Assembly: GCF_000150275.1 (NCBI RefSeq)
Contig: NW_002060943.1
Coordinates: 8,378,066 to 8,442,065 of the forward strand
Reading direction: 5' to 3'
Length of the DNA: 64,000 nucleotides
Source of the DNA: Trichoplax adhaerens
Taxonomy: Eukaryota; Animalia; Placozoa
Shown: positions 8,926 to 28,722 of the stretch, piece after piece
How the letters are laid out: every line of letters begins with the position of its first letter
Numbering within the stretch: the stretch's first letter is position 1
Translations under genes and position numbers: made by a program
Notes under the pieces: generated by a model
What the model was told of the DNA's origin: nothing
The model's database searches: none
The model's input: the letters and a program-made list of their open reading frames with translations, nothing else

Positions 8926-11629
8926 ATGGAGAGCACTAAAAGTGAAAATCATAACGCTGAAATCAAGATATCAGGTATGATGTATGATTTACAGAATGTC
9001 CTAACATGTATCATAGACCAATCCTGGCTGAATTAGTTGAACTTACCTTTTGAAAAGCTGCAATATTTCAGTGTCTGGAAATATAGTATTGAGCTGTATA
9101 TCATACCAAAATTCCTACAGTGCACGAATAGTGGGCTTCTTTATCTTGTAAATAGAGAATATGCTGATCTAATCCAACTATCATTTAATCAATTCCTTTT
9201 ACATATACGATATTCTGCCATAGATAGAGTGAAATACTTTTTAGTTATAATTGAAAAATGATGCTAATGAATAATATTAGTGGTGCATACACTTCCCTTA
9301 CGCATATCAAAATAGAGCTAAATGTCTGCGTTAGATGCGGTCCGCAAAATTTTTAAATAGTATAATCTTCATTATTCGAAAATGGATTAATATACTATAT
9401 TAATAAATTCATTATTTATGATGATGCTATAAGTAACCTATCTTTTTACAGAACTACAGGATATCTGCAATCAATCAGTCAATAGTTATCAACTTGCCAT
9501 TGAATCTAGAGGCGGTAAATTGATTTGACATACCTTATAAAATTATAAAGATAGCCTCAAAATTCTTACAGAAGAAATTAAATCTGCAGTAATTGCAATA
9601 AGTAAAGTTAATATACACAGATTAACTTTACAAAATTATATAATTTAAAAATCCTTTATCTTAAATCATTCATTTTGCTTATTATGTTTCCTTTCATTAC
9701 AGATGATAAACTATCATCAGCAAAAGACACAATTAAGAAATCGTTATCTGTGCAAGAAACATTAATTGGTATCATAGTCGTAATATTTTTAGCTTTAACT
9801 TTTAGTCTTATGAGCCAATTTGGAAAAGATTTATTCTCCAACAAAAGTAATTTTACATCTGTGACGTTTTATACTTGGTACGTGATATTTTTACAATCTT
9901 ATATAGCATGATTGCTATCCTAGAGAAATAGTCATACTCCGAATATACATCGCGCTTAGAACCTTCACATACATGAAGAATAATTGAGTGCTACGTAATT
10001 TCTTGCAGTTCATAATAGACTTTTAGCTCTAATTTCTATACATTAGCGTTCATCCATTAAGTATGCATAACTTCGACAAGAGAATTATAAATAGTCATTT
10101 ATGTCCATATCATAATACTAGCTGTTACTGTAAACTAATGTACGATACTATTTCTTCCTTTCCTTTATAATTTATCATACAGGATGATGTTTTCTCTGTA
10201 TGCGTTTTTTTAGTTCTGAGTTTCAATGTCTTGCTTATTATCTATGAATTATTTTCTGTATTACGTAAAACTTTCTCCTTTGACGCTAGATTCTACTTCA
10301 TACGAATCATAGGTTTTCAATTTCCATGTATACCTTGATGCTTCCAATTATCTCATCGTTATTAGTTTTGTTTAATGGTTATACTTTTCGACAGTGCTAC
10401 AGGTATCTTGGATAACTTTCGATCAATCAGGTTGTTAATAATATATCATTTAACATTGCATCTATAACAATGTCTTCGTTAGGGAAGCCATACGACTGTA
10501 TTCCAATCACGGATTTGTAAAAACGACTTTATTTCGAATCCTTCCGTTAGCGATATTGCTAAATGCCGCTATTGTATCGAATTTTTACGCCCTAGTATTT
10601 ATTTTACCTTCCGATTTTACAGCAATATTTTCTTCGGTATCTGTGTTTGTTTATATATTATCTATTTTGATATTGAAGGAACCTTTCGTCGCGATTCGGG
10701 TAATAATTTTGATAGATAGATACATACGTATTAACAAGGATATTATCATTATTAGCATTATACTTGTCATATTTTAATATACTGTAAGCGTATTAATAAG
10801 GTTGTTTCGCTAATTCTGATGGAATAGTAAAGATTAAATGCGGCTCCATTCCTGCTTCTGGTAATAGCTACGGTATAACATTACGATACACTTTTGACTT
10901 TTAGGCTGTAGCCGTATGCCTATCTATAACCGGTGTTATATTATTTGTGTATGCTGATGGCTTTGGAAATTTTGCTATAACTGGCTTCGGGCTAGCTCTC
11001 ATTAGCGCCATATCAAGTGCTGTTTATCGTGTAAGTACGATATTATTATATTATTGAATATTATAATTAAGTGCAATATCGTAATTCCGGAATTATCCTG
11101 TGTACATAAAGTAATATTTGCGTATCTTATACGAGTAATATAATGCTAGAGTAATTTGTTGTGTTTTTAATTTGCTATATAGATTTTAGCGAAATTAACT
11201 ATAGGCGAAAGGACTGTAATTCAAGTATCGCTACTAACTGCTACCATTGGTGGACTAACGTTTTGCCTAACTTGGATACCGGTTGTTATATTAAATATTA
11301 TTGGCGTTGATGTTAATTTATGGTCGAATATTACATGGGGACCTCTATTAAGTACTGTTGCATTTAATGTGCTATATGATTTTCTACTTGTACTTGGAAT
11401 TGCTGTAACATTTCCGGTATTTATTTCCCTTGGCGCACTATTTGGAATACCTACAAATTCGATAATAGATGCAGTTATACGAAATCAAAGTTTTACTATA
11501 GCTAAAATTTTTGGTACAATTTTACTAATTATAGGATTTGCTATTCTCATAATACCAACAGAAAAGGCCCTGATTATTTCGACAAATATTATTAATATTT
11601 GTACATGTAAATCTACGAAGTGTAAATAA
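8926..11629 (+). CDS. SLC35F3/F4-like DMT transporter, copy 2, 7 exons
   Basis: Exons 8926-8974, 9452-9514, 9703-9877, 10313-10402, 10483-10699, 10905-11030, 11183-11629. Motifs SQFGKDLF..NFTSVTFYTW, PSDFTAIFS..FVYILS..LKEPF..IR, YADGFG, SAVYR and FPVFISLGALFGIPTNSIID match recalled SLC35F3/F4 motifs (TDVSVLF, TYADGF, YPTLMSLG..IPVNAVID). Confidence 0.88.
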
Positions 11630-12746: not shown

Positions 12747-15136
12747 CTAATCTTGAGGATGATGTGTATCTCTCGATACTTTACACAGAATGACGTCAGT
12801 GATTTTTTTAGAAATTTTTATAGCTTTTCCTGTTGGTATTAATAGGATTACGAAAGCTAAAATAAGTAAAACCGTACCAAAAATTTTGGCTTCCGTAAAT
12901 GCTAAATTGCGTGTTACTGCATCAATAATCGAGTTTAAAGGTATTCCAAAAAGTGCACCAAGGGAAACGAATATCGGATAAGTTATGGCAATCCCAATTA
13001 CAAGTAAAAAATTATATAATACATTAAATACAACAGCTACCATTAGCGGTCCCCAAGGAATAGTAGACCATAAATTTATATCAACGCCGATATTGCTTAG
13101 TATAATTACTGGTATCCAAGATAAGAAGAGCGATATTACACCAATATTGGAAACTAGTAATGATATCTGAAGGAGCGGCCTGTCGCCAATTATTAATTTT
13201 ACGAAAACCTATATAATGTAATAATAAGGTGATACAGAAATTACACAATAAATAGTGTTGGTGCCTTAATCAATACTCGTATAAACACTATTTTACGATG
13301 ATCAATTTTTGGAAAGTTTGATCTACTTACGCGATAGAATGCGCTTATAACAGAGCAAGCAACAGCTAATACTACGCCTATTATCGCAAAGGTTCCAAAG
13401 CCATCAGAATATGCAAATAACACAACACCAATAATAGATAAAATTACAGCTCCAGCCTAAAATCGACAAATACAGATGTACGAGTATTAATAGTTGTCAG
13501 ATACATTAACTATTCAGGAATTCATCCTATATTAAGGCTAGATCACTTTAATCAAAACATGCGTCTACTAAAAATTTAGTATATACAGTACTGTACTGTA
13601 GGTACAAGCGATTGATACACTTATACACCCGATCTTTCTACGAATAAAAAGGTTCTAAAAATTGTTTTAAATTACCCTAAGAAGAATAAATTGTTCTTTC
13701 AATAGTATGATGGAAAGAATATAAACAAACGCAGCAGTCGAAGAGAAAATAGCAGTCATATCGGATGGCGCAATGAACTGTAAAGCGTAAAAATTCGTTA
13801 CAATTGCACCATTTAGCGTTAATGCCAATAAAAGAATTCGGAGGAAAACTGTTCTTATGATTCCATGCTCAGAATAAAGTAGTTTAGCTTCACTAGTAAA
13901 GGAAAGATGAATATAATTTCAGAATTTCATAAACAGTCAGTTCTACATAAAAAGTTATTTCTCGCATATGTTTGTATAATTGATAATTTTAACCTGCAGC
14001 ACTGTTGGAAACTGTAACCGTTGAATAGGATCATTAAGAATGAGATACTTGGAAATATGATAACATATGAGGACATCCCTAACCTTTTATTTATAGATAC
14101 AAAAAAAAATTTTCTGTCAGTTGAAAGTGTTTTTTAAAACCATTGTTTAGAGTCTTAGATTACTGGCATAAAATATTAACTTTACTGCATACGTACTGTG
14201 ACAGAGTGGACATAAATACAGCAAAAGATGCACTTGTAATTGTTACCTTTTGATAATGTTAACTGGATTAACATATTAGCTATGACTGCAAATGATGTAT
14301 CTGACAACTAGCGCAGCAGCACTTAAATTATATTAAAAGATTTCGAAATTATCTTACGATTATATAAATTACTCTTGAAGCCTATTATTTGTGCTTCTTA
14401 CCATGTATAAAACGCCACAGAAGTAAAATTATGTTCGATTGAGTATAAATTTTTCCCAAATTGGTTCAACAAGCTAAAGCAAACAGCAATGAGTATCACC
14501 ACGGTAATTCCAATAATTGCTTGTTTAACTGATAAAGAAATTTTATTTTGTCGCGTCTCCCGTAATAGGTCATCATCTACGAGATAATTATTATATTAAT
14601 TACTAATACAATTTCTATATTGTAAACGATCGTTTATAAATGGACTTGATAGTAAATTACGTGTACATCGTAATTTTAAAATAAAATCTATTCTGGTTAT
14701 TTACTCTCAAGTTTAGATTTATGAAGAGGACTTACTATTTCTAAGTTCAATAGCAAGATCATAACTATTCATCGATGGATGGCGGCTGCAATTTGATTTT
14801 GCATGATTTTCTGCACGTTCTAGCAAATTGTTATAGTTAATCAGAAAAGTCATCCTATGCAGTCTATACAGCGATAAGGTTTAATTGTAATATATTATCA
14901 CTGAGGTGCGTGAACACCATTATTGGTTGTTATGAGACTTTTTGAGTATCTTTTGCGTTAAGCAGGAGTAAGCATATCTTAATTGGCTTTAAATAATTTT
15001 ACTCTTTGCTAATGAATGGAGTTTAAGTTTTCAGACTATAGAATAATCATCTCTAACGCTAGCAAACTAGTTCTAGGAGTGTTGGTGTTTCCAATATCGT
15101 ATCAAAAATACCTGATGGTTGCGTTTTCTTTTCCAT
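12747..15136 (-). CDS. SLC35F3/F4-like DMT transporter, copy 3, 7 exons
   Basis: Exons in transcript order: 15136-15112, 14810-14736, 14576-14402, 14083-13994, 13892-13676, 13456-13331, 13208-12747. Starts MEKKTQPS and ends DTHHPQD*. Ten hydrophobic segments. Confidence 0.9.
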
Positions 15137-17323
15137 AGCGTTTATTAAAAATAAGTTATAAATATCTAATCAGACCTATAGTATCGTATTGATCTTATTG
15201 GAAATAGTTAATATAACGTTTTCGTTGTGAGCTTCGTAACCTATACTGTAGTAATAAAATTGCACGAATTAATTGCTGATTTTAAACGATAACAAGGGTT
15301 GCTAATTGCGATATATACGCATTAATTCAGTGGTTCGATCATTGCCAGTGAAAATTATTTCTTCAACTGCATTATTTTAGGTACGTTATACTCGTAGTTT
15401 GGCTCTAAAATGATCATTTAATCCTATAACTGAAATACCCAATGAAACTATTGGCATTTATCAACATTATCGGCTCTAGTAGACCAATATCTGAACATCT
15501 GTCGTTAATGCCTGCTTGGTAAAATAGTAACTCTACCGTTAGCTGGTTATCCTACTGTATTGTGATCAAAATAGCACTGCACGGTAGCACAGTCTGTATC
15601 AAATATGGAAAGATCGAATAATAACGGTAATAATCAATTATTGCTATAAGAGTCAATATATTCAACTGGAGTAATCAATTTGACATGTAGTCAGTACGTT
15701 TCCTGCGGATTAATGTCGACGTCCATTAAAATGACATAAGTAAAAGTTTTCCTCAAAAATGAAATCTTATATTTATTATTCAAAGAAAGCGGAACATTAA
15801 CTATGTTACAAGGTATCACGTGATGCCACACTTCCAGCCTTCTTGGAAAGTAAAAAATAGAAATAAAAGAAAATGTCTACATCGCGTATTTTAAAAGGGA
15901 GAAATTGTATTTCTAGCTTGGATAGGCAAGTGTCTTAATCATCTGAATTGGCAGGATATAGGTACTTGTAGTCATTTCGGTTTAGGAAGATGATTGAATA
16001 AGGTATCGATCATCCTTTCTTTACCTACCGAAATAGGATTATGACGACTGGGCTTCAAACGTAATCATTAAATAAAGGTTTTGTTGAATAATAATACAAA
16101 GGGCAATTTAAATCGATTTACCGAACCTTTCTCAGGTCTAGCATAGACAGAATTTGGTAACTTACGTCGATGGAATGCGTGTATGATAGAAGGAGAAATT
16201 TTGTAGGACTTATCTTGGCTCATTGAATTGGATTGAACATGCGATTGGTGTTGCTTTTCAACCATGAATCATTGAACAACGTCTGACGTTGTCTTGGTTG
16301 TCTTCGTCGCATGTAAGTTGCAAACTTAATGATCAAGGCTGTCAGGAGCGATCAAGAGCCATTAATCGATGTATATTAAGTATGTACCGATGCATTCAGT
16401 GCTAACTATGTTGATTCTCCAATCATGGTTTGTTTGTTCTATAATCATACGATAGAGATTTTTTTGCTGACCCAATTAGGCCTGGATTGCTAACTGTAAT
16501 GAATATGATTATTTTAGTTGCTCCTCGTAGGGTACGTACGTATAAGGATGTGAAGATGAGGCCATTTATTCGATTTGCGTACTTGCACCATCCATTGGAT
16601 TTAATTCAATCAATCAAGGCAAGTGCATAGTAGGGTTAGGCGATTTGTATAAAGGATGAACGGGAGAAAAGAGAATTTACTGTTTGAACGTGCATGATTG
16701 AAAGTTGACTGACAGTCTTGTAACGATGGACACATGCAGTGCATTCTATCATGGATCACTAGCAGAAAACCTTTTCTTCTAGTGGTCCATCACTCGATCT
16801 ACTGTTGGCTTTAAGTTCAGTGAATGACAGTTAAGATGGATACGTACAGCACATTTAGCAGGCAAAATGGAGTGGACGTATATCTGTTATGTCTACCGAT
16901 TTCAAGAGACGATTTTTTTTCAGTTGTGTTGAAATTTTTCGCTAGTTTACTGGCTTACAGAAGGTGCTGTCTACCGAGCCAAGGTAAGGCAACAAATAGC
17001 TAGGAGGGGGGGGGGAGTGCAAGCTCACGGGTGACTACTGTAGGCGGATGTCACCAGTTGCTTGTACAATATTCAGTACAGTCTCCATGATTGACGTTCA
17101 CGCAAGCATGTCTCGCCACCGGTCAAGGTCCAATCTGTACACTCACCCAGTGTACGTGTACAGTACAGTATTGTACTGTATTGTACTGACTGACTTAGGA
17201 CTAAGAGATTCCCCCCCCCCCCCCTAAAGTATAGCCGCCGCGGCACTTCCGCTGACTAGTCCATAAGTATTTGATGGACTTGTACAATTATAAAAGAGAA
17301 AAAAGTACCTTAACATCCGCCCA

Positions 17324-17910
17324 GCCCAGTTTATTGCTGCGGAGTACAGACTAACTGTAAATAAATTGAAGAGGATTTTTCTCTCTGTGCTTGCAATTTG
17401 ACAGTATTTGGTGGACTTGTAGCCCAGTTCATTGCAGCAGAGTACAGACTAACTGTAAATAAATTGAAGAGGATTTTTCTCTCTGTGCTTGCAATTTGAC
17501 AGTATTTGGTGGACTTGTAGCCCAGTTCATTGCTGCGGAGTACAGACTAACTGTAAATAAATTGAAGAAGATTTTTCTCTCTGTGCTTGCAATTTGACAG
17601 TATTTGGTGGACTTGTAGCCCAGTTCATTGCAGCAGAGTACAGACTAACTGTAAATAAATTGAAAAGGATTTTTCTCTCTGTGCTTGCAATTTGACAGTA
17701 TTTGGTGGACTTGTAGCCCAGTTCATTGCAGCAGAGTACAGACTAACTGTAAATAAATTGAAAAGGATTTTTCTCTCTGTGCTTGCAATTTGACAGTATT
17801 TGGTGGACTTGTAGCCCAGTTCATTGCAGCAGAGTACAGACTATCTCTAAATAAATTGAAGAGGATTTTTCTCTCTGTGCTTGCAATTTGACAGTATTTG
17901 GTGGACTTCT
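17324..17910. repeat. 98-bp minisatellite, 6 near-identical copies
   Basis: Unit GCCCAGTTCATTGC(A/T)GC.GAGTACAGACTAACTGTAAATAAATTGAA..GGATTTTTCTCTCTGTGCTTGCAATTTGACAGTATTTGGTGGACTTGTA starts at 17324, 17422, 17520, 17618, 17716 and 17814. Confidence 0.97.
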
Positions 17911-18565
17911 AAAGGGAAAGAAGTCCCTACAAATGTCTCGAGCATTTCTTGTCTTCTTTTTGACTACAACGAGTATACGCGTTTACGAATATTGGTATAA
18001 TTGCATGCACTACCGTAGCAGAACGTAGTCAATGTCTTCGTTGAGACGAAAATTTTAATTACTGTACTGAGTATAATTACACGAAATTGTTTTGACAGGG
18101 CTATAGGGATCTAGTATACGCGCTTTAGAGATCTTTTTCTTAATTTCTTGGGTTATCAATGAATGATTAAAGGACTGTTTATGAATAGTTACTGTACTTA
18201 AAGCCAGAGTATTACTATAATAATCTTATCGAAATACCCGTATATACGACTATGTCCCTATATAAAATTTATTACTGAATCATCAATTCATTTTGGTATT
18301 TTATTAAAATCAGATCATCTCAGAAACTTTTTAAAAGAGTTTCCTTTAATTTAAAGCTAATGGTTATGTAAAGAAAATGAGTACTTCCACGGACTTATTA
18401 ATAAATTAATAAATGATCAAAGGATTATTTTTGCGAACATTTATGACATTAAAAGTCACAATCATATGCTTTATGATAATACGAGTAGATCGTGCCTGCA
18501 AAATTCTTTTAAATTACGATTAATGCTTACACAAATTATTTAATATATGTATAGTACAATTAGTT

Positions 18566-21279
18566 CTAATCTTGAGGATGATGTGTATCTTTCGATACTT
18601 TACACAGAATGATGTTGGTAAATTTTTGAGAAATTTTTATAGCTTTTCCTGTTGGTATTAATAGGATTACGAAAGCTAAAATAAGTAAAACCGTACCAAA
18701 AATTTTGGCTTCCGTAAATGCTAAATTGCGCGTTACTGCATCAATAATCGAGTTTAAAGGTATTCCAAAAAGTGCACCAAGGGAAACGAATATCGGATAA
18801 GTTATGGCAATCCCAAGTATAACCAAAAAATTATATAATACATTAAATGCAACAGCTACCATTAGCGGTCCCCAAGGAATAGTAGACCATAAATTTATAT
18901 CAACGCCGATATTGCTTAGTATAATTACTGGTATCCAAGATAAGAAGAGCGATATTACACCAATATTGGAAACTAGTAATGATATCTGAAGGAGCGGCCT
19001 GTCGCCAATTATTAATTTTACGAAAACCTATATAATGTAATAATAAGGTGATGCAGCAATTACACAATAAATAGTGTTGGTGCCTTAATCAATACTCGTA
19101 TAAACACTATTTTACGATGATCAATTTTTGGAAAGTTTGATCTACTTACGCGATAGAATGCGCTTATAACAGAGCAAGTAACAGCTAATACTACGCCTAT
19201 TATCGCAAAGGTTCCAAAGCCATCAGAATATGCAAATAACACAACACCAATAATAGATAAAATTACAGCTCCAGCCTAAAATCGACAAATACAGATATAC
19301 GAGTATTAATAGTTGTCAGATACATTAACTATTCAGGAATTCATCCTATATTAAGGCTGGATCACTTTAATCAAAACATGCGTCTACTAAAAATTTAGTA
19401 TATACAGTACTGTACTGTAGGTACAAGCGATTGATACACTTATACACCCGATCTTTCTACGAATAAAAAGGTTCTAAAAATTGTTTTAAATTACCCTAAG
19501 AAGAATAAATTGTTCTTTCAATAGTATGATGGAAAGAATATAAACAAACGCAGTAGTCGAAGAGAAAATAGCAGTCATATCGGATGGCGCAATGAACTGT
19601 AAAGCGTAAAAATTCGTTGTAATGCCAGCATTTAACATCAATGCCAATAAAAGAATTCGGAGGAAAACTGTTCTTATGATTCCATGCTCAGAATAAAGTA
19701 GTTTAGCTTCACTAGTAAAGGAAAGATGAATATAATTTCAGAATTTCATAAACAGTCAGTTCTACATCGAAAGTTATTTATATGCTTGCATAATTGATAA
19801 TTTTAACCTGCAGCACTGTTGGAAACTGTAACCGTTGAATAGGATCATTAAGAATGAGATACTTGGAAATATGATAACATATGAGGACATCCCTAACCTT
19901 ACATTTAAAAATATAAAAAAGAAATTTCTGTTAGTTGAAAGTGTTTCATAAAACTCCTGTTTAGAGCCTCTGATTACTGGCATAAAATAGTAACTTAAGT
20001 TATTACATATAGTGACAGAGTGGATAAATAAACACACTGATTGAATTGATACAACTTATAGATCTTACCTTTTTGTGATGCTAACTGTATAAGCATATTA
20101 ACTATGACTGTTAATGATGTATCGGACAACTAGTACATTACAGCACGTAATTTACACGATTTCGAAATTTTTATCTATTGCTATACAGTATACTGTATAT
20201 GTTAATGTTTCTTTAAGCAAATTAGAATTAATTTATTGTGCTTCTTACCATGTATAAAATGTCACAGAAGTAAAATTATGTTCGATTGAATATAAATTTT
20301 TCCCAAATTGGTTCAGCAAGCTAAAGGTAACAGCAATAAGTATCACCACAGTAATTCCAACAATCGCTTCTTTAACTGATAAAGAAATTTTATTTTGTTG
20401 CTTCTCCCGTAATAGGTCATCATCTACCACATAATTATTAAATTTATAAATTAGTAATACAATTTCTATTTTATAAATGATCGTTTCAAAGTGATTTCAA
20501 CAGTAAATTATGTGTGTGGATCGTAATTAAAATCTCGAACTCCTACAAAAGAAAGACACGGGACATGAAACGGTCGTTCGTTATAGTGATAATGTGGAGG
20601 CTGATTATTTTACCGGTCATTTCATCTGTATTGTATGTCTCCACGACACACTGTTCTGTCCGTAGTTGACATCTAAATTAACTGCTATAAGCCTGCTAAA
20701 TTAGTTTGTATAGTGTGGTATACGGCTTCGTTGGCACAGTTTAGTTGAATGACCGAGAAAATAATAAGCCTCCACACTATTTTGCGTTGAAGGCCGTTTC
20801 CTTGTCCGCCTTTTTCTTTTAGCAATCTCTGTTAAAGTAAAACAGTATTCTAGCTATTTACTCTCGAGTTTAGATTTATGAAGAAGACTTACTGTTTGTA
20901 AGTTCAATAGCAAGATCATAGCTATTCATTGATGGACGGCGGCTGCAATTGGATTTTGCATCATTCTCTGCAAGTACTAGCAAATTGTTACAGTTAATCA
21001 GAAAAGTCATTGCTATCTAGCATACGATATCCAGCAATAGAGGTTTAATTAAGAGATGTTTTTAGAATATCTTTCACATTGAGCAGGAGTCACAATGAGT
21101 CTCTATAAGAGTAAGCATGTCCTAATTTGTTTTAAATAATTTTACTTTTTGCTAATGAATGAAATTTAAGTTTCCGGTCTATGGAATAGCCATTTCTAGC
21201 ACTAGTAAACTAGTTGAAAGAGTGTTGGTGTTTCAAATATCCTATTATAACTACCTGATGGTTCCGTTTTCTTTTCCAT
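18566..21279 (-). CDS. SLC35F3/F4-like DMT transporter, copy 4, 7 exons
   Basis: Exons 21279-21255, 20967-20893, 20423-20249, 19897-19808, 19711-19495, 19275-19150, 19027-18566. Exon sizes are identical to copy 3. Confidence 0.9.
20531..20831. mobile_element. ~300-bp MITE-like insertion in intron 2 of copy 4
   Basis: Absent at the homologous intron position in copies 3 and 5. Flanked by TTAA (20527-30, 20832-35). Imperfect ~75-bp inverted repeats at 20547-20623 and 20747-20820 (GTGGAGGCTGATTATTTTACCGGTCATT / AATGACCGAGAAAATAATAAGCCTCCAC). Confidence 0.8.
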
Positions 21280-21513
21280 AGCGTTTATTACAAATAAGTT
21301 ACGAATATCTAATCAGACCCACTATATCCTTTTGGTAATAGTTTATAGCAAGAGCTGTCTACCAAGCAGTGAAGGCGGATCAATTGATCCGTAAAGGCAA
21401 CAAGTAGCCAGGAGGCCGTGCAGCGTACGGTAGCCAACCAATTTGATGGCTACTTTGGGGACGCACTTGTAAACAGTACAATGTACGATTACAGACAGAC
21501 GTACTGTGTAGCA

Positions 21514-21587
21514 GAAATGACCAGAAAAAAAAGCCCTCACATTTTTTGTCGATGGAAAGTCGTTTCTTGTCCCTCTCTTTTCTTCCG
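21514..21587. mobile_element. Solo diverged end of the same MITE family
   Basis: GAAATGACCAGAAAAAAAAGCCCTCACATTTTTTGTCGATGGAAAGTCGTTTCTTGTCCCTCTCTTTTCTT aligns by eye to 20747-20820. Confidence 0.65.
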
Positions 21588-21990
21588 CGTTGTAGTCCTG
21601 GTTACGCGAATGTCAGCAAGGGCTTATAGCTCTTACTGTCTCAATGGTTCATACAAATTCGTTTAAATGATGGAATAATCTACTTTGTCTCAAGGAACGT
21701 GGAACGCTACGATAGCGGTCACATGCTATTTTAAGACCAATTACGCTGTAGAGACCTCCAACTTTTTCCTCCGAGGCAAAATATAAGTAAATAATTTTTT
21801 TTTATATTCTGTCGACTTTTATTACTGTCTCACTTTGGACAAAGACCTAAGGAATTGACTTTTATCTTAGTAGGGGGAGGTGCCGGGGACAAAGCACATT
21901 ATCATTATCCTATTATCTGAACCAAGTCTGAACGAATCTGCAAATACATCCAAGATTTTCGCTAAAAAGCCCCTGATAGATGCAACATTG

Positions 21991-22028
21991 TGGCCAGTGA
22001 CTTGCCACTGGCCAGGATCGATTCTAGT
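21991..22028 (+). mobile_element. Helitron-like 3' terminus (hairpin + CTAG|T)
   Basis: Perfect 9-bp stem TGGCCAGTG-acttgc-CACTGGCCA (21991-22014), then 9 nt, then CTAG (22024-27) followed by T. The 5' end was not identified. Confidence 0.55.
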
Positions 22029-22913
22029 GTCGTAGAGTGCAGTACTAATGCTCTATTCAAATACGGTAATTACTACTATTCAAGTTAGTTGTAGTCCATG
22101 GTTTAGCGAATTAAAGGAAATTTTCCTATCTGGTTTAAGGGACTCCATGCCTAGTGTAACAGAGTCATCGCTGAACTGACGATCACTAATTAATAAGACT
22201 CAAAAGCTAAATTGTACAGTATTGGAGCGCATTTTAAAACTATTCTTCGTAGAACATGCTTTCAATAATTCGTATACGTGTAATTAGCCAACAAATCCTC
22301 AATTCTGAGTTTAAATTAGATGTAGCAATGAATTGTACATTATAGTAAAGTTGAAAAAGTCTTAACATTCTTCGTATTCTTCTTTGACCTCTACGACTAC
22401 ATCCATCTTAGTAGCATGTAGTCAATGTCTCCGTTGGAGCGGAAATTTGTTATTATACAGTTTTATTACACCAAATTTTTTGGTGATTGCAATAGGGATC
22501 TAGCGTACACGGTTTAGAAATCTTTTTCCTAATTTTGTGGGTTATGAATGAATGATTAAAAGATTTATTATGAATAATTACCGTGTTAGCCGGAGTATTA
22601 TCACAATAATTTAAATAATATAATTTATTACCTAACTATCAATTCATTTTACAATTAATGATCACGTAAAAAATAAATGAGTACTTTCACCCTTTGTCGC
22701 TTTCACGGACTTATTAATAAATTAATTAATAAATATTTAAGAGATTATTTTGCTAACATTTATTGCATTACAAGTCACAATCATACCGATGTGATCTAAA
22801 TAATTCATTACCTAGTACGCAATTCATTTTGAATATTTTATGGTAACTGATTGCTACAGAATTCTTTAAATTACCACTAATGCTTACATAAATAATTTAA
22901 TGAATAAATATAA

Positions 22914-25339
22914 TTAATTGTAATCTTGAGGATCATGTAAATCTCGTGATGCTTTGCACAGAATGAAGTTGGTAAATTTTTGAGAAATTTTTATAGCCGT
23001 TCCTGTTGGTATTAACAGAATTGCGAAAGCTACAATAAGTAAAATTGTACCCAAAATTTTGACTTCCGTAAAAGCTAAATTGCGTGTTACTGCATCAATA
23101 ATCGAGTTTAAAGGTATTCCAAAAAGTCCACCAAGGGAAACGAATATCGGATAAGTTACGGCGATTCCAAGTATAAGGAAAAAATTATTTAGTATATTAA
23201 ATGTGATAGTGACCAGTAACGTTCCCCAAGGAATAGTAGACCATAAATTTATATCAACGCCCGTATTGCTTAGTATAATTACTGGTATCCAAGATAAGAA
23301 GAGCGATAATACACCAATAATGGAAATTAGAAATGATACCTGAAGTAGCGGCCTGTCGCCAATTATTAATTTCACGGAAACCTATATAAAGTAGTGATAA
23401 GAAGGCACAACGATTACGCATAACTTGGAACAAGTGTTAGCGTCTTATATCGATATAACTTATTAGACATAATCATGATATAATATGATGTAATTAGATA
23501 TAACCGATACAATTATAGATTGAGTAATTTTTGAAAGTTTGATCTACTTACACGATAGAAGGCGCTTATAATAGAGGAAGCAACAGCCAATATTACACCT
23601 ATAATCGTAATGGTCCCGAAGCCATCAGCAGCTGTAAACAAAACAACACCAATAATAGATAAAATTACAGCTCCAGCCTAAGATCCACAAATGCAAATAT
23701 ACGAGTGTTAATAGTTGTCAGGTAAATTATTTCTAGAATTCATCCTATTATTAAGGCTCCGATCACTTTAGTTAAAACATACGCCTACTAAAAATTTAGA
23801 ATACGTAAAGACGTAGTTAAAAGCGATTGGTGTGTTTATACAACCGATCTTTCTATGAATAAAAAGGTTCTAAAAATTGCTTTAAATTACCCTAAGAAGA
23901 ATAAATTGTTCTTTCAATAGTATGATGGAAAGAATGTAAACAAATCCAGCAGTTGAAGAGAAAATCGCAGTCATATCGGATGGCGCAATGAACTGTAAAG
24001 CGTAAAAATTCGTAATAATGGCACTATCTAGTAATAATGCCAATAAAAGAATTCGCAGGAAAACTGTTCTTATAATTCCATGCTCAGAATAAAGAAGTTT
24101 AGCTTCTCTGTAAAGGCAAACATGAATATAATTTCAGAATTTCATAAACAGTCAATTCTACATCGAAAGTTATTTATATGCTTGCGTAGTTGATAATTTT
24201 AACCTGTAGCACTGTTGGAAATTGTAACCATTAAATAGAATCATTAAGAATGAGACAACTGGAAATATGATAACATATGAAGACATTCCTAACCTTTTAT
24301 TTAAAAATACAAAAGTAAAGTTTCTGTTAGTTGAAAGTGTTTTGTAAAACTGTTGTTTAAAGTCTTAGATTGTTGGCATAAAATACTAACTTACGATATT
24401 ACATATGGTGACAAAGTGGACACAAACACACCGAATGATGCAACTTGTAGTGGTTTGGTCATGCTAACTATGTTATATTAGCCTATTAGCCATGACTGTA
24501 AATGATATATCGGACAACTAGTACATTGCAGCACGTACATTCAATGAAACGATTTCGAAATTATTATCTATCACTATTATGTTAGTTTTCTTGAAGTCAA
24601 TTGCCTGAGCTTCTTACCATGTATAAAATGTTACAGAAGTAAAATTATGTTCGATTGAATATAAATTTTTCCCAAATTGGTTTACCAAGCTAAAGGTAAT
24701 AGCAATGAGTATCACCACGGTAATTCCAACAGTTGCTTCTTTAACTGATAAAGAAATTTTCAGTTGTTGCTTCTCCCGTAATAGGCCATCGTCTACCAGA
24801 CAATCATTACATTTATTACTTATTAATGCAATTTCTATATTGTAAATGATTATTTCTCAATGCATTCAACGGTAATTATGTGTACATCGTAATTAAAATA
24901 AAATATTACTGTAGTTGTTTACTCTCAAGGTTAGTTTTATGAAGAGGACTTACTATTTCTAAGTTCAATAGCAAGATCATAGCTATTCATCGATGGATGG
25001 CGGCCGCTATTTGATTTTGTATGATTCTCTGCAAGTACTAGTAAATTGTTATAGTTAATCAGAAAAGTCATGCAATCTAGTATACACAGCAATAAGGTTT
25101 AATTCTAATTATCACTGAGGTACATGAACGCTATTATTGCTTGTTTTGAGGCGTTTTTAGAACATCTTTCGCATTGAACAGTAGTAAAGACATCTTGATT
25201 TGTTTTGAATAATTTTACTTTTTTCTAATGAATAGAATGATCATTTCTACAATATATCAGACAAGTCAACTAGTTGAAAGAGTGTTGGCGTTTGGAATAT
25301 TCTATCCAAAATACCTGATGATTGCGTTTTCTTTTCCAT
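22914..25339 (-). CDS. SLC35F3/F4-like DMT transporter, copy 5, 7 exons
   Basis: Exons 25339-25315, 25028-24954, 24792-24618, 24293-24204, 24107-23891, 23677-23552, 23381-22914. Splices in frame and ends DLHDPQDYN*. Confidence 0.9.
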
Positions 25340-25911: not shown

Positions 25912-26668
25912 TTTAATCGATCAATGCAATTGGATACTATATCGTAAAAAATGAGAATTCACTGCTTGCCATGTTATAGAAGTGGAAAGTTAGCTGGCAC
26001 TCACTATCGAGCAGTGTGCATTTTCCGACTGTTGGTTGTTTAGTTTAATAATCTAATTCTTGGATAAAAGTTGAGATGGATACGTACTCTACAGCGCATT
26101 GAACAGGCAATATGGTGGTTGTATGTCTGTCAAGTCTTCCCATTTCAGCGCTTCATTTTCTCCACTTGTTTTGCCACTTTTTTTAACATCTAAATATAGC
26201 AGTAAAGTGCTGTCCACCCGGTAGTAAAGGCAACAAGTAGCTAATCCCTCTAGCGATTTCAGCACATCATTTTCTTCAGCTATTTTGCAACATTTTAGAA
26301 CACCCAGCAACAACAGCAAAACGCCAATGACTCCTGGTAGTATAGGCAACCAGTAGCCAGTACCGGTAGCCAGTACCGGTACCAGTACCAGTACCAGTAA
26401 GCAGTTCCTGGCCTGAAGGAGTCTGGTGCGGAAACCAGCGACAACGTGATTGATAGTATAACTTGTCACGTACGCTAATGAACATCTACTCTATTGGCAC
26501 AGCACTACTGTTATGAGCACCACTATTAAAATGAAACGGCAACTAAAATAAATAAATGACCTAAGGTCACGTGTTCACGTCTTCAAATCCATACTAAACA
26601 ATATATTTCAAAGTCATCCATGGGAAGGCATAGTACCACTGTGAAGAGTAATTGGCTTGGAAAAGAAA

Positions 26669-27330
26669 CAAGTCCCAGCCGGCCATTGCTGTAATTAATC
26701 TTGACTTGAAGACAATTTTTGCTCTCCATGTTTGCAGTTTCTTCTTGCAAGAGATACAAGTCCCAGCAGGCCATTGCTGTAATTAATCTGACTTGAAGAC
26801 AATTTTTGCTCTCCTTGCTTGCAGTTTCTTCTTGCAAGAGACACAAGTCCCAGCAGGCCATTGCTGTCATTAATCTGACTTAAAGACAATTTTTGCTCTC
26901 CTTGCTTGCAGTTTCTTCTTGCAAGAGATACAAGTCCCAGCCGGCCATTGCTGTCATTAATCTTGACTTGAAGACAATTTTTGCTCTCCTTGCTTGCAGT
27001 TTCTTCTTGCAAGAGACACAAGTCCCAGCAGGCCATTGCTGTAATTAATCTGACTTGAAGACAATTTTTGCTCTCCTTGCTTGCAGTTTCTTCTTGCAAG
27101 AGATACAAGTCCCAGCAGGCCATTGCTGTAATCAATCTGACTCGAAGACAATTTTTACTCTCCTTGCTTGCAGTTTCTTCTTGCAAGAGACACAAGTCCC
27201 AGCAGGCCATTGCTGTAATCAATCTGACTCGAAGACAATTTTTGCTCTCCTTGCTTGCAGTTTCTTCTTGCAAGAGATACAAGTCCCAGCCGGCCTTTGC
27301 TGTAATCAATCTGACTTGAAGACAATTTTT
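26669..27330. repeat. 87/88-bp minisatellite, ~7.6 copies
   Basis: Unit CAAGTCCCAGC(A/C)GGCCATTGCTGTAATTAATCTGACTTGAAGACAATTTTTGCTCTCCTTGCTTGCAGTTTCTTCTTGCAAGAGA(T/C)A starts at 26669, 26757, 26844, 26931, 27019, 27106, 27193 and 27280. Confidence 0.97.
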
Positions 27331-28722
27331 GTTGGCCGTTCGGTCAAAATTGGGATCGAAGCCTGTGGAAAAGGTAAGTAAAGATCCTCTTCTTTATCAG
27401 GATCAATATGTTCTTTTCCCCTTGATGATGGAGGGAAACAAGCAATGTTTTAACATGGACATTGTGGTGAATAGTTTGCAATGATGGATAGACTAGCGTA
27501 GTACACAATTATTCGATCAGATTGGAAAAACCGTTTAGCTAGGATTTCCCAGTGAAACATCGTATTTTGACTGACCTTTAGCAGATACCATAAGAATAGT
27601 ATTCATGTTGTCTGCTAACTACGACACATACTCCCTTCTTCATCTCGTCGATGATGGCGATCTTGAACATTTGTAGATGATCAATAATTATAATTGTCAT
27701 AATCAGTATTTACAACTACATACTAACGTAAAGCCATACATAGTGGCGTGACAGGGATTGACTCAAGTTTTACTTATCTCTTTTTTCTTCATTATTTACT
27801 TATTTTGGAAAAAAATTAAGAGATAATTTATGATATCATTCATAATGAACTCCGCCTAGTTTTTCGACTTTCCTGCTCAATTCGTCCAAATTTAACAGCA
27901 GCTACTCTAATGTAATTGGATACTTTTCTGTGCTACACAGAACTAAATGATTATTCCACCTCTTGATTTTATTCGACGTAGCTCCACGAACCCTTAATAG
28001 TGATGATAGATGACATCATTTTTAAACTCCATCGATCAAGTCAACTTTATTGTTCTACCTGCTTTCAATTTCGAATAATTTGTTTAAATCTCTATTATAG
28101 TCTTTGATGTACTTTTTTTATGTTCAACTTGATGCATCCTATCCTTTTCAATGGATAAGCAACGCATTCAGTGATGAATATCATTAGATTCCACTTTTAG
28201 TACTCTTCAGATATTTTTGCCTAACTGCAAGAGAGTGTAAATGCATAGCATTAGACATGCCAGTATCACTTCAATTTCATCCCGTTCAGTGGAAAGAAAT
28301 GATTCTATTTGCATCCAAATTCTTTCATTCTCAGAAATTACATTTCTTCTCTACTTTATGGTAATGATGTACTACCATTCGCTGAAATCATTAAAGTACG
28401 GTTACTACACCAGGCGATATTTCAAATGGCTTGTCGTTTGAAATGCTACTTGAGCACACTTTGTACTACTTTAGTGCAGTAACTAACTGCATATGAACTG
28501 TTACTTATAAGCCAAACTTTCGGCTACTCTCCTCATTTGAAGTCACAGGATTAATCATATTGGGCGATACTGTACGATGCAATTATGATTTTCACACTGC
28601 TGTACCCAGAATGCCATAATTTCATCATCCGTATAGTTACCTGCATTTACTTGAAGTCTATAACGAGAATCCGATACCTTCTATCAAACTTGATGATAGG
28701 CGCCAAAATATCACCTGCTTAA

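What the first reader, a model, noticed from the sequence alone, without database searches (positions are those of the whole stretch)
12995..13825. Hypervariable islands in predicted cavity-lining helices survive inside the homogenised tract
Seen: within the ~99% identical tract, copies 3 and 4 differ at 8 of 24 nt in TM3 (LTLNGAIV vs LMLNAGIT; copy 5 LLLDSAII, copy 2 ILLNAAIV; 13798-13822 vs 19617-19641). They also differ at 5 nt / 4 aa in TM8 (VFNVLYNFLLVI vs AFNVLYNFLVIL), with single replacements in TM4 (STAA/STTA) and TM6 (VAC/VTC). TM5, TM7, TM9, TM10 and the loops look identical. Known: in DMT-fold structures such as YddG, TM1/3/4 and their pseudo-symmetry mates TM6/8/9 line the substrate cavity. 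Inference: selection shields specificity-determining patches from conversion, or micro-conversions shuffle pocket patches between paralogues. The array would then be a transporter system diversifying combinatorially at its binding site.
Basis: partly seen in the sequence, partly recalled or inferred. Interest (0 to 1): 0.85.

Follow-up and report, generated by a model that had tools for sequence, protein, structure and literature searches.

The report
Divergence islands inside converted transporter paralogues
In a Trichoplax tandem array of SLC35F-like membrane transporters, gene conversion has made neighbouring copies about 99% identical, except for two short codon blocks in helices TM3 and TM8 that stay strongly different; this is a clean, twice-replicated example of a known pattern (selection holding out against conversion), not a new diversification machine.

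Summary
The window is Trichoplax adhaerens and carries at least 9 intron-bearing SLC35F3/F4-like DMT/EamA genes (27 hits genome-wide). Copies 3 and 4 share a 1,277-bp tract (12810-14086 / 18629-19900) that is about 99% identical, introns included. Their differences cluster: 8 in 21 nt at mid-TM3, 5 in 33 nt in TM8, and one intronic cluster (0 of 200,000 permutations reach this density).

New here: a second, unrelated paralogue pair on another contig has its own ~1-kb tract with islands again in mid-TM3 and TM8.

Inside the islands both synonymous and non-synonymous divergence is 0.13-0.49. In the flanking tract exons it is 0.00-0.03. The islands are therefore older than their flanks, or selected.

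The TM3 island overlaps the wider family's most conserved TM3 motif, which aligns to substrate-contacting residues of the CMP-sialic acid transporter and LicB. Both copies are transcribed. All island differences are also present in Trichoplax sp. H2.

No donor for either copy-3/4 TM3 patch exists in the genome, and no patch allele is shared between paralogues. Micro-conversion shuffling and "combinatorial diversification" are therefore unsupported.

Best reading (about 0.6): an Innan-type "peak of divergence", in which selection keeps copy-specific pocket or gating residues against interlocus conversion. This is a known kind, new member. Cavity exposure could not be computed because model coordinates are not exposed.

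The parts
12747..14772 (-). Copy 3 gene (SLC35F3/F4-like DMT transporter). Exons: E1 14736-14772, E2 14402-14576, E3 13994-14077, E4 13676-13892, E5 13331-13456, E6 12747-13208.
   Evidence: Reading frames and GT-AG borders read from the sequence. RNA contigs of run X20 join 13206/13329, 13455/13675, 14081/14400 and 14576/14736 with no mismatches. Exon 4 matches EamA at E=2.2e-05.
18569..20929 (-). Copy 4 gene. In-frame exon matches: E6 18569-19027, E5 19150-19275, E4 19495-19710, E3 19810-19890, E2 20251-20421, E1 20894-20929.
   Evidence: tblastn of copy-3 exon peptides. An RNA contig carrying the 4+5 copy-4-specific letters across the E2-E1 joint shows it is transcribed.
12810..14086 (.). 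Copy-3 side of the homogenised (gene-conversion) tract, about 99% identical to copy 4, spanning E3-E6 with their introns.
   Evidence: Windowed identity and the full list of differences.
18629..19900 (.). Copy-4 side of the same tract.
13800..13820 (-). TM3 island in copy 3: 8 differences in 21 nt. Patch codons = residues 149-156 of the 392-aa protein, in the middle of helix 136-164.
   Evidence: Nei-Gojobori pS 0.49, pN 0.28.
19619..19639 (-). TM3 island in copy 4.
   Evidence: Unique in the genome at up to 3 mismatches.
12998..13030 (-). TM8 island in copy 3: V299A plus LLVI/LVIL at 307-310. 5 nt, 4 aa.
   Evidence: pS 0.13, pN 0.14. Copy-4 letters seen in independent runs X1 and X2.
18817..18849 (-). 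TM8 island in copy 4.
13949..13975 (.). Intronic island between E3 and E4: 2 adjacent substitutions, a 5-bp indel and 2 substitutions. Copy 4 equals copy 5 here and copy 3 is the odd one out.
   Evidence: No local or inverted donor found.
23891..24106 (-). Copy 5 exon 4: 7 differences from copy 3 in the 192 nt outside the patch, 8 in the 24 nt inside it (LLLDSAII).
10484..10699 (+). Copy 2 exon 4 (opposite orientation, 64% aa identity; patch ILLNAAIV).

Best explanation
Shown: neighbouring, same-orientation paralogues about 5.8 kb apart have exchanged 1-1.3-kb segments (exons 3/4 to 6 with introns) by interlocus gene conversion. Two short codon blocks stay 13-49% diverged at both synonymous and non-synonymous sites: one in the middle of TM3 and one in its pseudo-symmetry mate TM8.

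Inferred: these blocks carry copy-specific residues of the substrate pocket or gating hinge. Haplotypes in which conversion overwrites them are removed by selection. Tightly linked synonymous differences are carried along. The result is narrow 'peaks of divergence' of the kind modelled by Innan.

The outcome is a set of differently tuned DMT transporters, not an active shuffling mechanism.
For: 1. The tract includes introns at about 99% identity, so it is conversion and not constraint.
2. Islands are far denser than chance: 0 of 200,000 permutations for pair 1 and 3 of 100,000 for pair 2.
3. Island divergence is pS 0.29 / pN 0.20 in pair 1 and pS 0.23 / pN 0.28 in pair 2. The rest of the tract exons show pS 0.005 / pN 0.003 and pS 0.026 / pN 0.
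4. There is an independent replicate: L035 versus L037 on contig C1342 (about 47% aa identity to copy 3) has its own tract, with islands at residues equivalent to 151-158 (TM3) and 298-305 (TM8).
5. The N:S ratio is 11:2 in the pair-2 islands against 0:4 in the rest of its tract (Fisher p=0.006). Pooled over both pairs it is 20:6 against 2:5 (p=0.027).
6. Copy 5's exon 4 is homogenised with copies 3 and 4 except for the same 8 codons.
7. Introns in both tracts were homogenised although unconverted introns are 20-40% diverged. Dense mismatch alone therefore does not protect a segment.
8. All island differences are present in Trichoplax sp. H2.
9. Location:
   - The patch lies mid-helix in a confident model (pLDDT 87.7).
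   - It overlaps the wider family's conserved TM3 motif F..LW..(A/T)NY.Y..AL.
   - That motif's W and N align to CST Tyr82 and Asn86, whose alanine mutants abolish CMP binding.
   - By repeat symmetry it also aligns to LicB Y233/Y236, which bind choline.
10. The substitutions include polar or charged residues deep in the membrane: N/D, G/S, V/T, T/M in pair 1; D/N, N/H, C/F, N/T in pair 2.
11. Both copies are spliced and transcribed.
Against: - omega inside the islands is about 0.7-1.2, which on its own is compatible with unconstrained codons.
- An equally dense island lies in an intron of the same tract (13949-13975), so not every island needs protein-level selection.
- No site is fixed between species yet shared by both copies. 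Ongoing conversion since the H1/H2 split is therefore not demonstrated, although only about 7 mutations are available to test it.
- The varying residues are spread around the helix rather than on one face, and TM3 has a lipid-exposed outer face in SLC35B1.
- The substrate of these proteins is unknown.
Confidence: 0.6

Rival explanations
1. Neutral mosaic conversion. The islands are relics left by discontinuous (patchy) mismatch repair, or by gaps between separate conversion events. They are visible only where codons were already unconstrained and highly diverged. No functional differentiation is needed.
For: - An intronic island exists in the same tract.
- omega is about 1 inside the islands.
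- The block 149-157 is the most variable stretch of TM3 among all Trichoplax paralogues, without helical periodicity.
- TM3 has a lipid-exposed face.
Against: - The same two helices carry islands in two independent pairs. My rough estimate for chance co-localisation is about 0.01.
- Introns, which are fully 'visible' targets, were homogenised over about 750 nt with only one clear island. Four islands fall in about 110 nt of TM3/TM8 codons (my rough binomial p is about 0.001).
- The varying positions include motif positions that are strongly conserved in the wider family.
- They include polar or charged changes deep in the membrane.
Confidence: 0.2
2. Adaptive bursts after conversion. The island differences arose after the last homogenisation through repeated positive selection (or one complex multi-nucleotide mutation) in one copy. 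They are not old differences that were shielded.
For: - In pair 2 an outgroup paralogue polarises the changes. L037 is derived at TM3 and L035 at TM8, and nearly all changes are non-synonymous.
- Island pN divided by flank pS is about 11 in pair 2.
Against: - In pair 1, 3 of the 8 TM3 differences are synonymous. Copies 3, 4 and 5 are mutually equidistant there (8, 8 and 10 of 24 nt), and both copy 3 and copy 4 carry states not shared with copy 5. This indicates an old three-way split.
- All differences predate the H1/H2 split.
- No template-switch donor lies nearby.
Confidence: 0.12
3. Micro-conversion shuffling. Short patches are copied in from third paralogues, giving combinatorial binding-site variants.
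For: In the Trichoplax sp. H2 assembly the TM3 and TM8 alleles of copies 3 and 4 appear in the reciprocal combination.
Against: - Neither copy-3/4 TM3 patch has any other match in the 105.6-Mb genome at up to 3 mismatches. The only exception is one 25-mer without flanking homology.
- The closest paralogue patches are 6-8 mismatches away.
- The H2 chimeras are reciprocal. They switch in the longest identical stretch (13238-13478). One of them sits on a 6.8-kb scaffold that starts and ends in the same minisatellite. This is the signature of a collapsed tandem-repeat loop in a short-read assembly.
Confidence: 0.04
4. Assembly or annotation artefact in the reference genome.
For: - The region is a tandem repeat.
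- The deposited gene models here are fragmentary.
Against: - Independent DNA runs from several studies carry copy-3-type or copy-4-type letters at the islands.
- The independent H2 assembly carries both forms.
- RNA contigs support the exon model.
Confidence: 0.02

Closest known systems
Peaks of divergence in duplicated genes under gene conversion: Innan's two-locus model for RHCE/RHD, and exon 5 of the human red/green opsins (review PMC3924837)
   Same: Paralogues are kept nearly identical by interlocus conversion, introns included. Divergence rises sharply only around functionally important codons.
   Different: - The peaks here are much narrower (8-33 nt).
- There are two per gene, on pseudo-symmetric helices.
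- They recur in two independent paralogue pairs.
- The functional importance of the sites is inferred, not measured.
- Ongoing conversion after speciation is not shown.
ATP1A1 tandem duplicates of Leptodactylus frogs (bioRxiv 10.1101/2020.08.04.234435)
   Same: These are tandem membrane-transport paralogues. A handful of substitutions near the ligand site are maintained by selection against homogenising conversion and persist across species.
   Different: There the ligand (toad toxin) and the effect of each substitution were tested by protein engineering. Here the substrate is unknown and nothing has been assayed.
GOT1 paralogues of the copepod Tigriopus californicus (PMC3728101)
   Same: [quoted passage not shown]
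   Different: That paper also reports novel combinations created by conversion. No such recombinant patch combinations are supported here.
SLC35F3/SLC35F4 (DMT/EamA fold; SLC35F3 is annotated as a putative thiamine transporter)
   Same: - 10-TM DMT fold.
- EamA domain.
- The best named non-placozoan relatives are SLC35F3-like.
   Different: - The copy 2-5 subclade has lost the family's conserved TM3 W..NY.Y and TM8 NFG residues.
- There is no PF06027 hit.
- Identity to bilaterian SLC35F3 is only about 30%.
- There is a lineage-specific expansion to at least 27 loci.

Membership tests
DMT superfamily / EamA-like transporters (PF00892) | EamA domain at or above Pfam's gathering score | tested here: met
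   The H2 full-length orthologue P0153 scores 28.2 bits against a cut-off of 28.2, E=2.6e-06. This is borderline. Exon 4 of copy 3 alone scores 25.2 bits, E=2.2e-05.
DMT superfamily / EamA-like transporters (PF00892) | Ten transmembrane helices forming two 5-TM inverted repeats | tested here: met
   The AlphaFold2 model (pLDDT 87.7, pTM 0.83) has ten TM helices, with breaks in TM4 and TM7.
DMT superfamily / EamA-like transporters (PF00892) | Fold similarity to solved DMT transporters | tested here: met
   Foldseek probability 1.00 to SLC35B1 (9i20, TMt 0.75), TPT (5y78), CST (6i1r, 6oh3), LicB, YddG (5i20) and Vrg4. The family profile hits LicB, CST, SLC35B1 and YddG by sequence.
SLC35F3/F4 subfamily (putative thiamine transporter) | SLC35F Pfam model (PF06027) hit | tested here: not met
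   No PF06027 hit for P0153 or P0152. Only one distant relative, P0030, reaches it (21.8 bits).
SLC35F3/F4 subfamily (putative thiamine transporter) | Family-conserved TM3 motif F..LW..(A/T)NY.Y..AL and TM8 ..NFG.. | tested here: not met
   In copies 3-5 the W, N, Y and Y positions read L151, I155, V/T/I156 and N158. The TM8 N309/F310 positions read V/I and I/L. Other Trichoplax paralogues keep the motif.
SLC35F3/F4 subfamily (putative thiamine transporter) | Thiamine transport activity | not testable with these tools
   Only database names are available.
Peak of divergence under interlocus gene conversion with selection (Innan-type) | Homogenised tract that includes non-coding sequence | tested here: met
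   Introns 13209-13330 and 13457-13675 are about 99% identical, against 57-80% outside the tract. The same holds in pair 2.
Peak of divergence under interlocus gene conversion with selection (Innan-type) | A local peak where synonymous and non-synonymous divergence both far exceed the flanks | tested here: met
   Nei-Gojobori counts.
Peak of divergence under interlocus gene conversion with selection (Innan-type) | The peak sits on functionally decisive residues | tested here: inconclusive
   Only homology mapping to CST and LicB binding residues and to the family motif is available. There are no coordinates and no assay.
Peak of divergence under interlocus gene conversion with selection (Innan-type) | Differences persist across species while flanks keep being converted | tested here: inconclusive
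   Persistence in H1 and H2 is shown. However, 0 shared species-fixed sites were found, so post-split conversion was not seen. The H2 assembly is collapsed here.
Cassette or micro-conversion diversification systems | Donor sequences for the variable patches elsewhere in the genome, and patch alleles re-used in different combinations | tested here: not met
   No donor for the copy-3/4 TM3 patches at up to 3 mismatches genome-wide. None among the fetched paralogue loci for either pair.

The most novel reading that the evidence does not exclude
A placozoan-specific subclade of SLC35F-like DMT transporters has discarded the family's canonical TM3 and TM8 pocket motifs. Each paralogue now carries private residues at exactly those two pseudo-symmetric segments, and these are protected from concerted evolution in at least two separate arrays. 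The family would then behave like a receptor-style repertoire whose specificity is set by two short 'hypervariable regions' in an otherwise homogenised scaffold.
Probability: 0.35. Interest if true: 0.6.

Novelty: new member of a known kind. Interest (0 to 1): 0.45.

Why it matters
If the islands do mark specificity or gating residues, they give a sequence-only pointer to the functional determinants of an orphan SLC35F-type transporter family. They define a ready-made set of natural chimeras (identical scaffold, different TM3/TM8 patches) for transport assays.

They also give an unusually sharp, replicated example of selection opposing gene conversion in an early-branching animal with little known recombination biology.

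It is not evidence for a dedicated diversification mechanism.

Tried and rejected
- **Donor search.** Both copy-3/4 TM3 25-mers were scanned against all fetched paralogue loci and against the whole genome at up to 3 mismatches. Only the patches themselves were found. One 3-mismatch 25-mer at G000:C1414:12651721 has no flanking homology and no transporter context; I treat it as chance.
- **Local template-switch donors.** None were found for the TM3 or intron islands. For TM8 there is only an 11-mer inverted match 1.2 kb away, rejected as chance.
- **H2 recombinant phase as evidence of shuffling.** Rejected as a probable assembly loop collapse.
- **Phasing the islands with public runs.** Logan contigs are bubble-popped and break or merge inside the identical tract, so they cannot phase.
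- **'H1-only' singleton differences inferred from the H2 assembly.** Run X3 shows the copy-4 letter at 13234 in H2 as well, so that inference is unreliable.
- **Solved-structure search with exon 6 alone.** Nothing useful.
- **Deeper placozoan orthologues of copies 3-5.** None found in the protein collection.
- **Literature on a Trichoplax SLC35F expansion.** None found.
- **Direct cavity versus lipid mapping.** Not possible, because the structure tool returns no coordinates.
- **Spliced model.** The spliced copy-3 and copy-4 proteins were never joined for any search or fold. Window exons were searched one by one by reference. The public H2 protein P0153 served as the full-length stand-in. In-frame exon pieces were only placed side by side inside a local script to count codon differences.
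Full report
**What the region is**

The window is AT-rich (about 31% GC) and has few long ORFs. On the minus strand at 12747-14772 lies a six-exon gene with GT-AG introns. Exon 4 matches the EamA domain.

A search with exon 6 against 1.84 billion representative proteins returned Trichoplax adhaerens and Trichoplax sp. H2 proteins first. After them came SLC35F3/F4-like proteins of other animals. The window's assembly has 105.6 Mb in 1,414 contigs. The deposited models TRIADDRAFT_52255, 52256 and 3933 are fragments of copies 4, 5 and 3.

tblastn of the exon peptides finds at least 9 paralogues in the window. The whole genome gives 27 exon-6 hits and 23 exon-4 hits, in several tandem clusters.

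The public H2 protein P0153 (392 aa, the copy-3/4 orthologue) served as the full-length protein.

**Checking the observation**

A three-way alignment of copies 3, 4 and 5 shows that copies 3 and 4 are 93-100% identical from 12751 to about 14099. Identity is 57-90% beyond that.

The list of differences defines a tract 12810-14086 (18629-19900 in copy 4), introns included. It contains 25 events:
- 8 substitutions in 13800-13820 (TM3)
- 4 in 12998-13005 plus one at 13030 (TM8)
- 4 substitutions and a 5-bp indel in 13949-13975 (intron)
- 8 scattered singletons, among them 13735 (STAA/STTA) and 13360 (VAC/VTC)

Random placement of 25 events never reached 8 in a 21-nt window in 200,000 trials.

Contigs from independent DNA runs carry copy-3-type sequence across the TM3 island and copy-4 letters at the TM8 island. 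The H2 assembly carries both forms at both islands.

RNA contigs reproduce the splice joints of copy 3 without mismatch. A second spliced contig carries the copy-4-specific letters, so both genes are transcribed.

**Fold and position of the islands**

An AlphaFold2 model of P0153, built on a 63-sequence alignment, is confident (pLDDT 87.7, pTM 0.83). It has ten TM helices:
- TM3 = 136-164, with the patch at 149-156 in its middle
- TM4 is broken at 175/176, next to STAA
- TM8 = 291-314, with the varying residues at 299 and 307-310

Foldseek places the model with SLC35B1, TPT, CST, LicB, YddG and Vrg4 at probability 1.00.

The tool gives no coordinates, so I could not measure cavity exposure. 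The indirect evidence is as follows.

- *Family motif.* In the wider family (61 sequences), TM3 carries its strongest conservation at F147, L150, W151, A/T154, N155, Y156, Y158, A161 and L162.
- *Alignment to solved structures.* In the profile-to-PDB alignment, W151 and N155 pair with maize CST Tyr82 and Asn86. The CST paper reports that alanine mutants of these residues abolish CMP binding, with Ser79 and Leu83 also contacting CMP (bioRxiv 10.1101/580449). By repeat symmetry, N155 and Y158 pair with LicB Y233 and Y236, which coordinate choline.
- *Where the variation falls.* The copy 2-5 subclade has lost these W, N and Y residues. The positions that vary among copies 3-5 (150, 152, 153, 154, 156) sit on and between the motif positions.
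- *Chemistry.* The changes include N/D, G/S, V/T and T/M, which are unlikely for a purely lipid-facing surface.

Against a simple 'pocket face' picture:
- The varying residues are spread around the helix.
- LicB has a glycine hinge at mid-TM3, so G/A/S variation may tune gating or packing.
- SLC35B1 shows a lipid bound outside TM3 and TM6 (PMC12267056).

**Age of the islands**

Nei-Gojobori counts:

| Region | pS | pN |
|---|---|---|
| Pair 1, TM3 island | 0.49 | 0.28 |
| Pair 1, TM8 island | 0.13 | 0.14 |
| Pair 1, rest of tract exons | 0.005 | 0.003 |

Three of the eight TM3 differences are synonymous. Copies 3, 4 and 5 are mutually equidistant in the patch (8, 8 and 10 of 24 nt), and copy 5 sides with copy 3 at five sites and with copy 4 at three. 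The island is therefore an old three-way difference, not a recent burst in one copy.

Copy 5's exon 4 differs from copy 3 at 7 of 192 nt outside the patch and at 8 of 24 nt inside it. The same codons have thus escaped a second, older homogenisation.

**Comparison with Trichoplax sp. H2**

Every island difference and most background differences are paralogue-specific in both species. No site is species-specific yet shared by both copies. The tract and the islands therefore predate the H1/H2 split, and no later conversion is visible. Only about 7 mutations are available to detect one.

The H2 assembly shows the reciprocal combination of TM3 and TM8 alleles. However:
- The two chimeras switch in the longest identical stretch (13238-13478).
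- One of them lies on a 6.8-kb scaffold bounded by the same minisatellite at both ends.
- The main contig lacks one 5.8-kb unit.

I read this as a collapsed repeat loop, not recombination. Public contigs cannot phase the islands.

**Donor search**

Neither copy-3/4 TM3 patch occurs elsewhere in the genome at up to 3 mismatches. The nearest paralogue patches are 6-8 mismatches away. A 3-mismatch 25-mer 4.2 Mb away has no homology around it. No nearby direct or inverted template exists. Micro-conversion from a third copy is therefore not supported.

**An independent replicate**

Among all paralogue pairs, only one other pair is at least 88% identical over at least 400 bp: L035 and L037 on contig C1342, again about 5.9 kb apart. 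They are only about 47% identical in protein to copy 3.

They share a tract of about 960 bp, from exon 4 to exon 6, with introns at about 97% identity. It holds 23 differences. Six of them lie in 22 nt at residues equivalent to 151-158 (TM3), and seven lie in 23 nt at residues equivalent to 298-305 (TM8). Only 3 of 100,000 permutations reach this density.

| Region | pS | pN |
|---|---|---|
| Pair 2, islands | 0.23 | 0.28 |
| Pair 2, rest of tract exons | 0.026 | 0 |

The N:S ratio is 11:2 in the islands against 0:4 elsewhere (Fisher p=0.006). Pooled over both pairs it is 20:6 against 2:5 (p=0.027).

The outgroup paralogue L036 indicates that L037 is derived at TM3 and L035 at TM8. L035's TM8 patch is unique, whereas L037's resembles other relatives. 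The changes include D/N, N/H, C/F, A/S, N/T and M/T.

**Weighing the explanations**

Neutral patchy conversion could leave relics. It predicts that relics are seen wherever the sequence was diverged beforehand, that is, above all in introns. Yet about 750 nt of intron in the two tracts hold one clear island, while about 110 nt of TM3/TM8 codons hold four. My rough binomial estimate gives p of about 0.001. My rough estimate for chance co-localisation of the pair-2 islands with the pair-1 islands is about 0.01.

I therefore favour selection keeping copy-specific residues against conversion (0.6). This is the 'peak of divergence' pattern described for RHCE/RHD and the opsins (PMC3924837), frog ATP1A1 and copepod GOT1.

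The other readings, with my odds:
- neutral mosaicism: 0.2
- post-conversion adaptive bursts: 0.12
- micro-conversion shuffling: 0.04
- artefact: 0.02

The intronic island (copy 3 differs, copies 4 and 5 agree) is unexplained. It may be one complex indel-associated mutation, or the gap between two separate tracts.

**Verdict**

The 'shuffling/combinatorial system' half is not.

This is a new, unusually sharp member of a known evolutionary pattern, in an orphan transporter family of a placozoan.

Noticed in passing
G000:C1342 about 32495 and 38429 (loci L035, L037; also L010, L008): A second paralogue pair has its own ~1-kb conversion tract, with dense islands again in mid-TM3 and TM8. Each copy is derived at one island. 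The changes are almost all non-synonymous.
   Followed up: yes
L028 (H2 NOWV01000595.1, 6,854 bp) and L029:14060-16774 (H2 NOWV01000007.1): The Trichoplax sp. H2 assembly holds reciprocal copy-3/copy-4 chimeras that switch between 13238 and 13478. The small scaffold begins and ends in the 98-bp minisatellite. This is probably a collapsed tandem-repeat loop, so the H2 gene models here (including P0153) are likely chimeric.
   Followed up: partly
window 17225-18008 and 26615-27399: Two minisatellites, with periods of 98 bp and 87 bp, lie downstream of copy 4 and upstream of copy 5 (G+C about 40% against about 31% around them).
   Followed up: no
window 20533-20832 (copy 4 intron 1; insertion point in copy 3 about 14676): Copy 4, and its H2 counterpart, carry an insertion of about 300 bp in the first intron that copy 3 lacks. 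Its origin was not examined.
   Followed up: no
window 12747-25000; proteins P0154, P0001, P0155: The deposited T. adhaerens models TRIADDRAFT_52255, 52256 and 3933 are incomplete. 52255 reads exon 3 out of frame and skips exon 4 (TM3/TM4). RNA contigs support the six-exon model given here.
   Followed up: partly
G000:C1414:12651721-12651745 (L053:2022-2046): A 25-mer with 3 mismatches (20 of 21 in its core) to the copy-3 TM3 patch lies 4.2 Mb away, with no homology around it and no transporter context. It is probably chance.
   Followed up: yes
L037 (C1342:36929-40108) and L038 (C1412:5920366-5923545): These are identical over 1,600 bp on two contigs. This suggests assembly redundancy, or a small contig that belongs in a gap of the larger one.
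   Followed up: no
exon-4 peptides of loci L030-L052: About nine of the Trichoplax paralogues (copies 2-5 and L034-L038) have lost the family's TM3 W..NY.Y motif, while the others keep it. This is a remodelled subclade within a lineage-specific expansion of at least 27 loci that I could not find described in the literature.
   Followed up: partly
window 13089-13090: Run X1 has a contig with two adjacent other letters (G>C, A>G) in exon 6. It may come from copy 5 or be a strain variant.
   Followed up: no
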